Below, one piece after another: positions 20,777 through 22,785 of a stretch of 64,000 nt of DNA. A program made the translations under genes and the position numbers. The notes beneath the pieces were generated by a model. It saw nothing but the letters and a program-made list of their open reading frames with translations, was not told where the DNA came from and searched no databases. The DNA is taken from the NCBI RefSeq assembly GCF_001194135.2, contig NC_068982.1, forward strand, positions 93,781,171 through 93,845,170. Reading direction: 5' to 3'. The stretch's first letter is position 1. Each line of letters begins with the position of its first letter. Source of the stretch: Octopus bimaculoides. Taxonomy: Eukaryota.

Positions 20777-22785
20777 CTGCTGGAACAGTTTTGTCACTGT
20801 GAGCAGGGTAAAGAAAACAGTTGGAGCCCTGAGGCACTATATGTATGCATGCATGTATGTATGTATGCATACACATATATATATGTGTATTTATATATGT
20901 GTGCATTTATATATGTTTGTGTATATGTATGAGAGAGAGGCATATTTGTGTTTCCTTCTCAACCATGTATTTGAGTTCAATTCCCCTGTGTGGCACATTA
21001 AGCAAGTGCCTTCTGATGTAGTCTTAGTCTGACCAAATTCTTGGGAGTGCATTTGGTAGATGGCAACTGAAAGATTATTTTCAGTGTTTGCGTGAGGGTA
21101 TTTCCTTTGTCTATACATGTGATTGTAAACAGTGACTTCACCTATGGTGTCATTTTCTTGCAGTCCACTGTGAAAGTATGTTTAAGCTTCTTAACATGTG
21201 TAATTTTTGTAAACAAAAGGCTTGTCCAAATGGTGTTTGTTTCCTGTTCACTTTTTAATCATGTCTGTGTTTGTTGTTATGATGAGCTGGAAAATTATTA
21301 CCTCACTTGTAAACAAGTGGGGGTTGGCAACAGGTTGAGCATCTTAGCCATAGTAAACTCTGCCCTAGCACACTCTCATCTGACTCTTGCAAGTGTGAAA
21401 AAATAGACGTTAAAACAATAATGATATATATTCACACACATACACTCAGATAATGTGATATTTATCAAAGTTAATGAATCCTAAGTATTTATTTAAAATG
21501 AATCAAATCTCCAAATATTGTATCAGCCAGTTATTCTTATCAAGCCTTTTGCTTCATTCCTGAAACTGTGGCTTCCATTACTTTTTTTTTTTTTTTTAAG
21601 CAATTAATTGAAAATACTGCATTTAGTTATCTCATTTAATGCATCAGTTGAATAGAAACTAAATTTAGTGTGGGTAAGGGAAGAAAGTACATAAACAATT
21701 TCTGCCTGTTTTTAAGTATGACAAGTTTAATCTAGTAATGGAGTAAAACAATTCATGTTGGACTACTTGTTGAGTACAAAGTGAATCATCACTAATGTCA
21801 GTGTTTGTGTGCTGTTGGCAGTGTAGCTTATTTCTTAGTTTTGAAAAATTCTCATCAAATTTAGCCTTGTCTGCTCACACTTGCCCGTGTGTTCTGTGGC
21901 CAGAAATAGGAAGACCTGCTTCATAACTTCTACTGATTGTTTTCACTGATTGTAGTAGTAGCAATTCACCATGATAAATATTTTGTTTACTTTTTTAAGT
22001 GGTTTCTTATTTTCTGTTTTTATTTTTCCCCCCACCCCTTTCCTTTCTTTTCTCTCTCTCTCACTCACCAGTTGCAGAATACTATAAATAGATTAATCCT
22101 TGGAAAGGAAGGTGTGTTAGACAAGCTGAGCCTTTTCAGCAGGAAGCTTGTGTGTTGCCTGAAACAGCAGTCATGAATTTTACTTCTCACTCCCCTTTCC
22201 AAAATTATAAACTTTAAAGAACTTCCTTCTAAATTTTCTTTTTCAATGTTTATATTACTATCTCTCTAATATCTCCTTGATTGCCTGCTACTCTATCTTG
22301 TTCTTAGCTTCTTATTTGTCTGAACTGATAGAATAACTATTATATCTTAAGTAGCTACTGGAAATTCCCCTGCTGCTGCTGTGGGCGTTATTCTAACTTT
22401 GGCCCAGACACAGAGCTCAAACAGCAGCAGTAACATATTGGACACAGCCACAACAACTTTACCATAACTGATAATTTATTTTATGAAAACGGTTATCTCA
22501 CTGCAGTCTCTATCTATCTCCTAATAATAATAATAATTCATTATGTCATATGGATCCTATCGCTATGGATTGCCAACATCCTCTTTAGGGGCTAATTCTG
22601 GGTCTTCCATTCATGGGAAAAATGGAAATAACTATCTTGGTTCTTCACTTGGTTCCGGTTATTCCTCTCGGTCTAGTTCAACAAGCAGTCTTTCAAGTTT
22701 AAGTGGATCCACTGGTGGTATTTACTCAGGCTCTTTAGGATCACTGGTATGTAAGTGTTCTTATGATTGGCTGACTGCTATAACT

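What the first reader, a model, noticed from the sequence alone, without database searches (positions are those of the whole stretch)
22507..22752. Hidden first exon in the 42.5-kb intron predicts a short M20/M21-like MYPT isoform
Seen: a 68-codon Gly/Ser/Tyr-rich frame starting at ATG 22543. Five in-frame TAA codons lie directly upstream (22522-22536) with no AG between them and the ATG, so it cannot be a normal internal coding exon. Its donor (CTG|gtatgt, phase 0) fits the exon at 58047. The product would be 187 aa plus a terminal exon and would lack the ankyrin/PP1-binding half and both RRST sites. Known: vertebrates make small M20/HS-M21 subunits from an internal promoter of MYPT2 (PPP1R12B). 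Inference: this mollusc-like genome has an analogous, possibly convergent, short coiled-coil isoform with a prion-like GSY-rich N-terminus.
Basis: partly seen in the sequence, partly recalled or inferred. Interest (0 to 1): 0.8.

Follow-up and report, generated by a model that had tools for sequence, protein, structure and literature searches.

The report
Conserved first exon, short MYPT isoform
A small exon inside a 42.5-kb intron of an octopus myosin-phosphatase (MYPT) gene is conserved, start codon included, across cephalopods, snails and bivalves, so molluscs very probably make a roughly 23-kDa "small subunit" like the vertebrate M20/M21 protein, which invertebrates were said to lack.

Summary
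ATG 22543 opens a 68-codon Gly/Ser/Tyr-rich frame. (TAA)5 lies in frame just upstream, and no AG lies between it and the ATG. A phase-0 donor (CTG|gtatgt) matches the phase-0 exon at 58047.

The window is the 3' half of an octopod MYPT gene, 93% identical to Octopus vulgaris PPP1R12A isoform X5, which skips this exon.

The exon is real coding sequence. Homologues lie in the same intron, on the same strand, with a phase-0 GT donor, in Batillaria, Elysia, an unidentified mollusc, two mytilids and the oyster. Similarity begins exactly at the Met (MSYGS[YH]RYG...). In-frame stops lie 3-5 codons upstream in four lineages. Between two mussels, 26 of 33 substitutions fall on third codon positions.

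The predicted 215-aa product has a disordered head and the PF15898 coiled coil. It has no ankyrin/PP1 half and no RRST sites. That is the M20/M21 architecture, with the head exon at the same gene position as in vertebrates and beetles.

Not shown: transcription, the promoter, the splice junction, and sequence homology of the head to M20/M21, which was tested and not detected. I file it as a new member of a known kind, of moderate interest.

The parts
22507..22542 (+). Leader directly upstream of the start codon. It runs from a possible acceptor (AG at 22505-22506) to the ATG and contains (TAA)5 at 22522-22536 in frame with the ORF.
   Evidence: no ATG and no AG between the TAA run and 22543, and A at position -3. 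Whether this is spliced 5'UTR or contiguous 5'UTR from a nearby transcription start is not known.
22543..22746 (+). Alternative first coding exon: 68 codons, MSYGSYRYGLP...GIYSGSLGSL, forming a Gly/Ser/Tyr-rich head.
   Evidence: for the frame. Homologues in Mytilus, Magallana, Batillaria, Elysia and an unidentified mollusc. Shuffle tests give z=5.6 and z=4.1.
22747..22752 (+). Splice donor gtatgt, phase 0.
   Evidence: In every mollusc locus, a GT donor in phase 0 stands directly after the end of the conserved peptide.
58047..58205 (+). Shared exon (SLNSRINS...LEMDYKK), phase 0-0. It is the predicted splice partner of the head exon.
   Evidence: O. vulgaris residues 876-928. The orthologous next exons in L001, L002, L008 and L009 also start in phase 0.
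58623..58769 (+). Shared exon (LYENEKDD...NQQKR), the start of the PF15898 coiled coil.
59961..60011 (+). Shared exon (EKRALERKLSELESAMV). The last exon, encoding the leucine zipper, lies beyond the window.
15497..15553 (+). Acidic exon (SDEESNSVSKEENESDDST). It is the last exon of the full-length form before the 42.5-kb intron and is not part of the short isoform.
   Evidence: In O. vulgaris isoform X5 it is joined directly to the 58047 exon.
5124..5138 (+). First RRST(Q) inhibitory-site motif of full-length MYPT, absent from the short isoform.
12686..12703 (+). Second RRST(GV) site, absent from the short isoform.
22082..22091 (.). CTATAAATAG, a TATA-like / MEF2-like element 461 nt upstream of the ATG. 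It is a lead only.
   Evidence: The motif class is not enriched in the window (33 matches against 22.8 expected). Three ATGs lie between it and 22543.

Best explanation
Bases 22543-22746 are the first coding exon of a second, short mRNA from this octopod MYPT (PPP1R12) gene.

**Shown**
- The ATG at 22543 is a conserved start codon.
- The 68-residue Gly/Ser/Tyr-rich peptide it opens is under protein-level constraint across molluscs.
- The exon ends at a conserved phase-0 donor that fits the phase-0 exon at 58047.

**Inferred**
- Transcription starts inside the 42.5-kb intron, either just upstream of the exon or at an upstream non-coding exon spliced to 22507.
- The head exon is spliced to the last four exons shared with full-length MYPT.
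- The result is a protein of about 215 aa and 23.5 kDa: a disordered low-complexity head on the PF15898 coiled-coil/leucine-zipper tail.
- The protein has no PP1c-binding motif, no ankyrin repeats and neither RRST inhibitory site. It therefore cannot target PP1 itself.

**By analogy with vertebrate M20/M21 (established knowledge, not tested here)**
- It would pair through the coiled coil/zipper with the C-terminus of full-length MYPT, or compete for the same partners such as myosin and cGMP-dependent kinase.
- It would then act as the small accessory subunit or as a modulator of the myosin phosphatase holoenzyme.
For: **1. Conserved homologues in the same intron.**
- Bivalve gene models P0004 (Magallana) and P0007 (Mytilus) contain MSHNHRYGVG... 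and MSYNYNRYSLG...GSGYSSRSGST.SLSS.
- Un-annotated copies were found by tblastn in Batillaria (L002:32551, MSYGSHRYGLP, 10/11 identical), an unidentified mollusc (L008:154, MSYGSYRYGIG) and Elysia (L009:2277, MSYGAHRYGVG).
- Composition-preserving shuffles give z=5.6 against Mytilus and z=4.1 against Magallana, with 0/1000 shuffles reaching the observed score.

**2. Similarity starts exactly at the Met.**
- An in-frame stop lies 3-5 codons upstream in the octopod, Batillaria, L008 and the second mytilid.
- No AG directly precedes the ATG anywhere.
- A purine stands at -3 in all loci.

**3. Splice geometry.** GT donors in phase 0 stand directly after the conserved end of the peptide, and the next MYPT exon is phase 0, in all five loci. 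Read-through sequence past the donor is not conserved.

**4. Coding signature between M. edulis and a second mytilid.**
- Differences by codon position are 5/2/26.
- 22 codon changes are synonymous and 6 non-synonymous.
- All indels are multiples of 3.
- Binomial p=1.1e-7.

**5. Promoter-like asymmetry in mussels.** The alignable block runs from -400 to the donor. Identity is 82% at -200..-1 and 86% in the exon. It is about 64% (background) in the downstream intron and further upstream.

**6. Product.**
- PF15898 at residues 118-185, 41.1 bits against a cut-off of 32.4.
- The AF2 model has no regular structure in residues 1-112 (pLDDT about 50 or below until ~110) and helices at 113-157 and 166-186 with block-mean pLDDT 80-93.

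**7. Same architecture and position elsewhere.**
- Vertebrate M20/M21 proteins of 185-186 aa: a 34-aa head that joins the shared sequence after the acidic stretch.
- Beetle short isoforms, including the RefSeq model XP_023022877.1 and two UniRef Photinus pyralis entries. From their accession series I take the Photinus entries to be transcriptome-derived; no tool output states their origin.
Against: - No RNA evidence of any kind could be consulted.
- No second cephalopod sequence was available. The direct test, conservation among cephalopods, was therefore replaced by conservation across mollusc classes.
- The only cephalopod protein recovered, O. vulgaris isoform X5, skips the exon. No protein in the 1.84-billion library starts with the octopod head.
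- There is no CpG island upstream: CpG o/e is about 0.1 at 21-22.5 kb. Promoter motifs there are not enriched.
- Bivalve annotations treat the exon as internal.
- The Batillaria copy has a +1 frameshift in the assembly. Its whole-exon similarity to the octopod is not significant once composition is controlled (z=1.6).
- No assembled mollusc transcript encoding the short isoform turned up in the protein collection.
Confidence: 0.75

Rival explanations
1. Truncating ('poison') cassette exon. The exon enters full-length transcripts through the acceptor at 22506. Its in-frame stops (tct cta tct atc tcc TAA) end MYPT after the acidic exon. The result is either nonsense-mediated decay or a MYPT lacking the coiled coil. 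The GSY frame is not translated.
For: A usable-looking acceptor, ctcactgcag|, stands at 22505-22506. Stops follow it in all three frames. No transcript data exclude this use.
Against: This reading cannot explain several observations.
- Peptide conservation begins at the ATG and extends across three mollusc classes.
- Substitutions between the two mussels fall mostly on third codon positions.
- The donor always stands in phase 0 of the GSY frame.

The two uses are not mutually exclusive.
Confidence: 0.07
2. A separate small gene nested in the intron. The GSY-rich ORF would be translated as its own protein, or joined to other unseen exons, and not joined to the MYPT tail.
For: In Elysia the ORF is annotated as a separate single-exon gene of 357 aa that starts at this ATG. 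No junction evidence was available.
Against: - Same intron and same strand in six lineages.
- Conservation stops at a GT donor whose phase matches the next MYPT exon in every locus. The read-through tails (VCKCSYDWLTAIT*, VSMCVT*, VCTNLL...) are unrelated to each other.
- Beetle and vertebrate proteins show exactly this kind of head joined to the MYPT tail.
Confidence: 0.08
3. An ordinary internal coding cassette exon of full-length MYPT, as drawn in the Mytilus edulis and Magallana gene models.
For: Models P0004 and P0007 include it between the RRST-site region and the DYKK exon. In M. edulis and Elysia the frame is open for 39 and 27 codons upstream of the Met, with in-frame AGs.
Against: - It is impossible in the octopod: (TAA)5 in frame, no AG after it, and no in-frame NAG inside the ORF.
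- It is impossible in the second mytilid and in L008, which have TGA 3 codons upstream.
- The residues upstream of the Met in the two bivalve models are unrelated to each other.
- The M. edulis acceptor has a poor pyrimidine tract.
Confidence: 0.02
4. A chance ORF in low-complexity intronic DNA.
For: ORFs of 55 aa or more are common in this window. Ser/Gly-rich sequence inflates raw similarity scores: whole-exon similarity to Batillaria gives z=1.6 and to insect heads z of about 1 or less.
Against: - Shuffle-controlled similarity to two bivalves.
- A 10/11-identical N-terminus in a gastropod at the same gene position.
- The codon-position signature between two mussels.
- Mixed codon usage and no tandem repeat within the exon.
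Confidence: 0.01

Closest known systems
Vertebrate M20 / HS-M21 small subunit of myosin phosphatase (short isoforms of PPP1R12B/MYPT2)
   Same: - Encoded by the 3' exons of a MYPT gene, with its own short first coding exon.
- The head joins the shared sequence at the same place: after the acidic stretch that follows the second inhibitory site, and before the exon ending in DYKK (P0048 against P0062/P0038).
- About 20-23 kDa.
- Only PF15898 is recognisable.
- No ankyrin repeats and no PP1-binding half.
- PMC4630939 describes PPP1R12B isoform C as a 208-aa C-terminal protein called M20.
- PMC10944028 shows hs-M21 unchanged when MYPT2 is deleted.
   Different: - The vertebrate head is 34 aa (MSSLYSRSKEYTRNRK...SPSP), rich in Ser/Pro and basic residues. 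The mollusc head is 68 aa or more and rich in Gly/Ser/Tyr.
- There is no significant similarity by Smith-Waterman with shuffles or by hhalign against reversed controls. Homology and convergence both remain open.
- Nothing is known experimentally for the mollusc form.
Beetle and stick-insect short PPP1R12 proteins (Leptinotarsa XP_023022877.1; Popillia KAK9731759.1 and KAK9731755.1; Photinus A0A1Y1JWN0 and A0A1Y1JTK2; Timema P0074)
   Same: - A Ser/Tyr/Gly-rich head starting MSYR.., MSFR.. or MSSYHR...
- In Popillia the head is encoded by one exon (P0091, genomic ORF ending ...SEGYI|).
- The head is joined to the same shared tail.
- The motif S[RK][SA]xS[TL][TSN]SL stands near the 3' end of the head in both phyla. 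It was defined after seeing the data, so it is only a hint.
   Different: - The heads are 156-185 aa.
- There is no significant overall similarity to the mollusc head.
- They are annotated only as database models. I found no paper describing them.
Bivalve gene models carrying the same exon (Magallana gigas K1PQN9; Mytilus edulis 'unnamed protein product' P0007)
   Same: They are true homologues of the octopod exon, with the same core GSGYSSR[SA]GST.SLSS and the same Met.
   Different: They are annotated as an internal exon with unrelated N-terminal extensions. Those extensions are probably artefacts of gene prediction. A second mytilid has TGA three codons upstream of the Met.
FUS-type [G/S]Y[G/S] low-complexity ('prion-like') domains
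   Same: The composition is similar: 65% G+S+Y. The gastropod copies hold many SYG, GYG and SYT repeats. The head is predicted disordered.
   Different: The octopod head has only two [GS]Y[GS] triplets and no Gln/Asn richness. The resemblance is in composition only.

Membership tests
M20/M21-type small subunit (short C-terminal isoform of a PPP1R12/MYPT gene) | Uses the 3' exons of a MYPT gene in the MYPT reading frame. | tested here: met
   The phase-0 donor at 22746 fits the phase-0 exon at 58047. The downstream exons map to O. vulgaris MYPT residues 876-993 at 90-94% identity. The splice itself is inferred.
M20/M21-type small subunit (short C-terminal isoform of a PPP1R12/MYPT gene) | Has its own first coding exon, with its own start codon, in the intron before the exon that ends in DYKK. 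| tested here: met
   The ATG is conserved in six mollusc lineages. In-frame stops lie 3-5 codons upstream in four of them. It occupies the same position as the point where vertebrate M21 and full-length MYPT2 diverge.
M20/M21-type small subunit (short C-terminal isoform of a PPP1R12/MYPT gene) | Transcribed independently from an internal promoter. | not testable with these tools
   No RNA or CAGE data were available. The only indirect evidence is a conserved block of 200-400 nt upstream of the mussel exon. There is no CpG island in the window.
M20/M21-type small subunit (short C-terminal isoform of a PPP1R12/MYPT gene) | Lacks the PP1c-binding motif, the ankyrin repeats and the inhibitory phosphorylation sites. 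| tested here: met
   Pfam finds only PF15898 in the 187-aa product, whereas O. vulgaris full-length MYPT has Ank domains. The RRST motifs at 5124-5138 and 12686-12703 lie upstream.
M20/M21-type small subunit (short C-terminal isoform of a PPP1R12/MYPT gene) | C-terminal coiled coil / leucine zipper (PF15898). | tested here: met
   PF15898 covers residues 118-185 and profile positions 1-71 of 101, at 41.1 bits against a cut-off of 32.4. Helices are predicted at 113-157 and 166-186. The zipper exon itself lies outside the window.
M20/M21-type small subunit (short C-terminal isoform of a PPP1R12/MYPT gene) | Head peptide related in sequence to the vertebrate M20/M21 head (needed to claim orthology, not to claim the same mode of action). 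| tested here: not met
   Smith-Waterman gives z=-0.3. hhalign probability is 0% (reported 0.0), no better than the reversed control. Only M-S at positions 1-2 and an Arg near position 7 are shared.
M20/M21-type small subunit (short C-terminal isoform of a PPP1R12/MYPT gene) | Binds the MYPT C-terminus and co-purifies with the myosin phosphatase holoenzyme. | not testable with these tools
   This needs biochemistry.
Mollusc MYPT 'MSYG..RYG' head exon (family defined here) | N-terminus M-S-[YH]-[GN]-x(0,1)-[YHN]-R-Y-[GS], core G-S-G-Y-S-S-R-[SA]-[GS]-S-T-x-S-L, a phase-0 GT donor, and location between the acidic exon and the DYKK exon. | tested here: met
   Batillaria has GSGIGSRSSSTSSL in place of the core.
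Prion-like / FUS-type low-complexity domain | Many [G/S]Y[G/S] repeats and a capacity for self-assembly. | tested here: inconclusive
   G+S+Y is 65%, but the octopod head has only two such triplets. The gastropod copies have many. Behaviour cannot be tested here.

The most novel reading that the evidence does not exclude
The small subunit of myosin phosphatase is not a vertebrate invention. On this reading, an internal promoter and a dedicated head exon in the intron before the DYKK exon already existed in the bilaterian ancestor. They survive in molluscs (Gly/Ser/Tyr head), insects (Ser/Tyr head) and vertebrates (M20/M21). The low-complexity head would be the functional part, for example by self-association on thick filaments or the cytoskeleton. 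The long-unexplained M20 would then become testable in invertebrate genetic models.
Probability: 0.3. Interest if true: 0.7.

Novelty: new member of a known kind. Interest (0 to 1): 0.5.

Why it matters
M20/M21 has been co-purified with myosin phosphatase since the 1990s. Papers still describe its function as unknown or unclear (PMC9418503, PMC9367544). A 2013 Drosophila paper states that no M20 has been identified in flies (PMC3723691).

A start-codon-conserved head exon at the same gene position in cephalopods, gastropods and bivalves, together with similar beetle isoforms, has three consequences:
- It suggests that a short coiled-coil isoform is a widespread and probably old output of MYPT genes.
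- It corrects several mollusc annotations. The exon is drawn as internal in Mytilus and Magallana, as a separate gene in Elysia, and is missing in Batillaria and in O. vulgaris isoform X5.
- It points to a conserved Gly/Ser/Tyr-rich head whose role could be tested in muscle-rich, experimentally accessible animals.

The finding remains an inference from genome comparison. It is one more isoform of a known type, not a new mechanism.

Tried and rejected
- **First protein search.** Word-indexed search with the 170-aa predicted product found nothing at E<=0.001. Low-complexity words probably crowded out the candidates. The canonical C-terminal half found the family instead.
- **Exact look-ups.** Neither the 81-aa read-through ORF nor O. 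vulgaris P0075 is on record in the contig index. No second cephalopod locus could be fetched.
- **Representative library.** phmmer of the predicted product against 1.84 billion representatives found no protein starting with the octopod head. It found only the full-length O. vulgaris form, which skips the exon.
- **Metagenome scan.** The scan with the octopod peptide gave 600 pattern matches, none confirmed. The exon alignment was too variable for the pattern tool.
- **Promoter signals in the window.** There is no CpG island: o/e is about 0.1 against a window median of 0.2. MEF2-like sites are not enriched: 33 against 22.8 expected, and 5 of 100 shuffles reach 33. CTATAAATAG at 22082 is kept only as a lead.
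- **Homology of the heads.** Comparisons of the mollusc head with insect and vertebrate heads were not significant by shuffled Smith-Waterman or by hhalign with reversed controls. A shared 9-residue motif is suggestive but was defined after seeing the data.
- **Internal-exon reading.** Rejected for this window by the stops and by the absence of any phase-0 acceptor.
- **Literature.** Dippold & Fisher 2014 (PMC4121627, PMC4349328), the most relevant survey of MYPT isoform diversity, is not held. I cannot say whether invertebrate short isoforms are mentioned there.
- **Other scans.** Rfam and tRNA scans of the window found nothing. Pfam found nothing in the intronic repeat ORFs.
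Full report
**What is in the sequence.**
- The stretch reads ...ctgcag|tctctatctatctcc(taa)5ttcatt ATG TCA TAT GGA....
- ATG 22543 opens a 68-codon frame, MSYGSYRYGLPTSSLGANSGSSIHGKNGNNYLGSSLGSGYSSRSSSTSSLSSLSGSTGGIYSGSLGSL. It ends at 22746 and is followed by gtatgt.
- The five TAA codons at 22522-22536 are in frame with it. No AG lies between them and the ATG.
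- No codon of the ORF ends in AG. The only way to read this frame is therefore to start at the ATG.
- The other five frames of the exon are closed.
- The exon is single-copy in the window. It uses five Ser codons and four Gly codons, so it is not a decayed microsatellite.
- ORFs of this length are common in the window. The frame alone proves nothing.

**The gene around it.**
- The + strand of the window carries the 3' half of a MYPT (PPP1R12) gene.
- phmmer of the predicted product against 1.84 billion representative proteins gave one close hit, P0075. [quoted passage not shown]
- It maps to window exons 2153-2586, 5046-5138, 5750-5977, about 7928-8014, 9731-9901, 12614-12721, 15497-15553, 58047-58205, 58623-58769 and 59961-60011. 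Identity is mostly 89-100%. The host is therefore an octopod close to, but not identical with, O. vulgaris.
- That isoform joins ...ESDDST (15553) directly to SLNSRINS (58047). This defines the 42,493-nt intron.
- Both flanking junctions are phase 0.
- The last exon, encoding the leucine zipper, is beyond the window.
- The two RRST motifs are at 5124-5138 and 12686-12703.

**The exon is conserved across molluscs.** A search with the canonical C-terminal half returned two bivalve gene models that contain a clear homologue of the octopod peptide:
- Magallana gigas K1PQN9: ...MSHNHRYGVGSSYP...GLGSGYSSRAGSTSSLSSIGSS...
- Mytilus edulis P0007: ...MSYNYNRYSLGSYPG...GIGSGYSSRSGSTNSLSSIGSS...

Against composition-preserving shuffles, the octopod exon scores z=5.6 with Mytilus and z=4.1 with Magallana, with 0 of 1000 shuffles as high.

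I then fetched genomic loci and searched their introns.

| Locus | Position | N-terminus | Note |
|---|---|---|---|
| Batillaria (gastropod), L002 | 32551 | MSYGSHRYGLP | Un-annotated; 10/11 identical to the octopod; lies between the acidic exon and the DYKK exon |
| Unidentified, gastropod-like mollusc, L008 | 154 | MSYGSYRYGIG | |
| Elysia marginata, L009 | 2277 | MSYGAHRYGVG | Head expanded to about 327 codons; annotated there as a separate gene starting at this ATG |

All copies end shortly after a core ...GS.[YI].SR[SA][GS]ST.SL..., at a GT donor in phase 0. In every locus the next MYPT exon starts in phase 0.

**The Met is a start codon, not an internal residue.**
- Conservation begins at the Met. 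The residues that the two bivalve models place before it (VSLTQTLT and LLEVHCEDGVTCSA) are unrelated to each other.
- The first in-frame stop upstream lies 3 codons away in the octopod, L008 and the second mytilid, and 5 codons away in Batillaria.
- In the second mytilid the stop is a TGA that the metagenome gene caller had read as Trp.
- No locus has AG directly before the ATG.
- All loci have a purine at -3.
- The internal-exon drawing of the M. edulis model is possible only because that species has TGT where its relative has TGA.

**Coding constraint, measured.** M. edulis was compared with the second mytilid over 71 aligned codons.
- The differences fall 5, 2 and 26 on codon positions 1, 2 and 3.
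- 22 codon differences are synonymous and 6 are non-synonymous.
- All indels are multiples of three.
- The binomial p for the third-position excess is 1.1e-7.

It is met in mussels rather than in cephalopods, because no second cephalopod sequence could be obtained.

**Promoter: indirect evidence only.**
- In mussels the alignable block runs from 400 nt upstream of the ATG to the donor and stops there.
- Identity is 82% at -200..-1 and 70% at -400..-201, against 86% in the exon. It is about 63-64% (the background of forced alignment) further upstream and in the downstream intron.
- That asymmetry is what a promoter plus 5'UTR in front of a first exon would give. It is not what a cassette exon would give.
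- In the octopod window I see no CpG island and no enriched motif.
- CTATAAATAG at 22082 is a possible TATA box, but three ATGs lie between it and 22543.
- The AG at 22505-22506 could instead receive an upstream non-coding exon.
- Neither alternative can be decided here.

**The product.**
- The window encodes 187 aa. With the terminal exon as in O. vulgaris, the protein would be 215 aa, 23.5 kDa, pI 9.6.
- Pfam recognises only PF15898 (the cGMP-dependent protein kinase interacting domain) at residues 118-185, above the curated cut-off.
- An AF2 single-sequence model has no regular structure in residues 1-112. pLDDT there is about 50 or below until roughly residue 110. Helices stand at 113-157 and 166-186, with block-mean pLDDT of 80-93.
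- The tail matches a solved MYPT1 coiled-coil fragment only weakly (5huz, E=0.008).

**Comparison with what is known.**
- Vertebrate short PPP1R12B proteins of 185-186 aa were recovered in the same search. They have a 34-aa head, MSSLYSRSKEYTRNRK...KTLR, joined to H[DE]RLSRL.... In full-length MYPT2 that sequence follows the acidic stretch after the second inhibitory site. This is the same gene position as the mollusc head exon.
- Beetle and stick-insect database proteins show a Ser/Tyr/Gly-rich head (MSYRSKQP.., MSFRNTPS.., MSSYHRS..) joined to the same tail at the same place. They include the RefSeq model XP_023022877.1 and two UniRef Photinus pyralis entries (A0A1Y1JWN0 and A0A1Y1JTK2). I take the Photinus entries to be transcriptome-derived from their accession series; no tool output states their origin. 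In Popillia the head is encoded by one exon.
- Architecture and position are therefore shared by three phyla.
- Sequence similarity of the heads between phyla is not demonstrable.
- A 9-residue motif, S[RK][SA]xS[TL][TSN]SL, lies near the 3' end of every mollusc and insect head and is rare in shuffles. I defined it after seeing the data, so it is only a hint.
- Common origin and convergence both remain open. I lean towards common origin within protostomes.

**Literature.**
- M20 is described as a subunit of unknown or unclear function (PMC9418503, PMC9367544, PMC5754374).
- PPP1R12B isoform C is the 208-aa C-terminal M20 (PMC4630939).
- hs-M21 is unaffected by cardiac MYPT2 deletion (PMC10944028).
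- I found no paper describing an invertebrate small subunit. The most relevant survey (Dippold & Fisher 2014) is not held, so I cannot exclude that it is mentioned there.

**Rivals.**
- A truncating cassette use of the same exon is possible alongside the main reading, but it does not explain the protein-level conservation.
- A separate nested gene is contradicted by the conserved donor, its phase and its position.
- An ordinary internal exon is excluded in this window by the sequence itself.
- Chance is excluded by the comparative data.

**Verdict.**
- It is a new (mollusc) member of a known kind of gene product.
- It is not demonstrated at the RNA or protein level.
- It is of moderate interest, chiefly because it extends the enigmatic small subunit of myosin phosphatase beyond vertebrates and corrects several annotations.

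Noticed in passing
L001:30328-30414 and 33213-33302; L002:38952-39038 and 42435-42524: Both the mussel and the Batillaria MYPT loci carry two alternative versions of the last (leucine-zipper) exon: ...ENGALIRVISKLSK and ...ENRALTRVV.... The oyster model P0004 strings both together. Beetle short isoforms exist with either ending (P0042 vs P0092, P0089 vs P0035). This looks like the LZ+/LZ- choice known from vertebrate MYPT1.
   Followed up: partly
L002:32650-32700: The Batillaria copy of the head exon changes frame by +1 between ...GSGLYSKS and ...SSYSPAGSSYTPAG. It may be an assembly indel. Alternatively, a 31-nt GT...AG segment would restore the frame if removed, but that is too short for a normal intron.
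   Followed up: partly
L009:2277-3350: In Elysia marginata the head exon is expanded to about 327 codons of Gly/Ser/Tyr/Pro-rich sequence and is annotated as a separate 357-aa gene. The downstream MYPT tail is fused in the annotation to a SETMAR/transposase model (P0078).
   Followed up: partly
L005:769-1248, L006:1004-1447 (proteins P0067, P0064): ORFs called on mussel genomic contigs from metagenome and Logan assemblies read the in-frame TGA before the Met as Trp (an alternative genetic code). This makes the frame look open upstream when it is not.
   Followed up: yes
L001:1-9918 and 10001-33305: The Mytilus edulis annotation splits the MYPT gene into two models: a 1035-aa N-terminal gene and the 286-aa P0007, which carries an invented N-terminus.
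   Followed up: no
window 513-645, 7486-7654, 23425-23598, 26437-26593, 34951-35112: A SINE-like interspersed repeat of about 160 nt has at least five copies at 68-78% identity. One lies 680 nt downstream of the head exon. Several are flanked by (CA)n or (TATG)n runs.
   Followed up: partly
window 17540-18000 and 62640-63200: A GC-rich element with relatively high CpG (o/e about 0.55-0.7, against a window median of 0.2) is present twice, mostly in inverted orientation, at 82-91% identity. It has internal repeats of about 60 nt. It is probably a transposable element. Pfam finds nothing in its ORFs.
   Followed up: partly
window 24884-25070 and 59542-59722: Two intronic copies of another repeat (81% identity) have open frames: PKHAQCLCSRLPKFSAKVHIGSIFQLPVH... 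and PKHAQSLCSRLLKFNAKFHVGTLFQLPVH.... There is no Pfam match.
   Followed up: partly
window 26950-27050: An ORF fragment with a YADD motif (TSYADDTKLSHAIKNPDDIISLQNDLNAIYKWAQ) suggests a reverse-transcriptase remnant. Pfam gave no hit.
   Followed up: partly
window 13340-14310, 16560-17520, 25980-26420, 39655-39740, 45355-45870, about 63070-63080: Runs of N (assembly gaps) interrupt the window. Two lie in the intron region between the acidic exon and the head exon, so an upstream non-coding exon could be hidden there.
   Followed up: no
L001:18850-18876, L004:1312-1338: The mussel leader holds two tiny conserved upstream ATGs just before the start codon. One is ATG CTG TAA. The other is ATG TAG in M. 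edulis and a 6-codon out-of-frame ORF in the second mytilid. They may regulate translation or may lie upstream of the real transcription start.
   Followed up: no
whole window: CpG is strongly depleted: median observed/expected is 0.20 in 1-kb windows. This is consistent with heavy germline methylation of this gene body.
   Followed up: no
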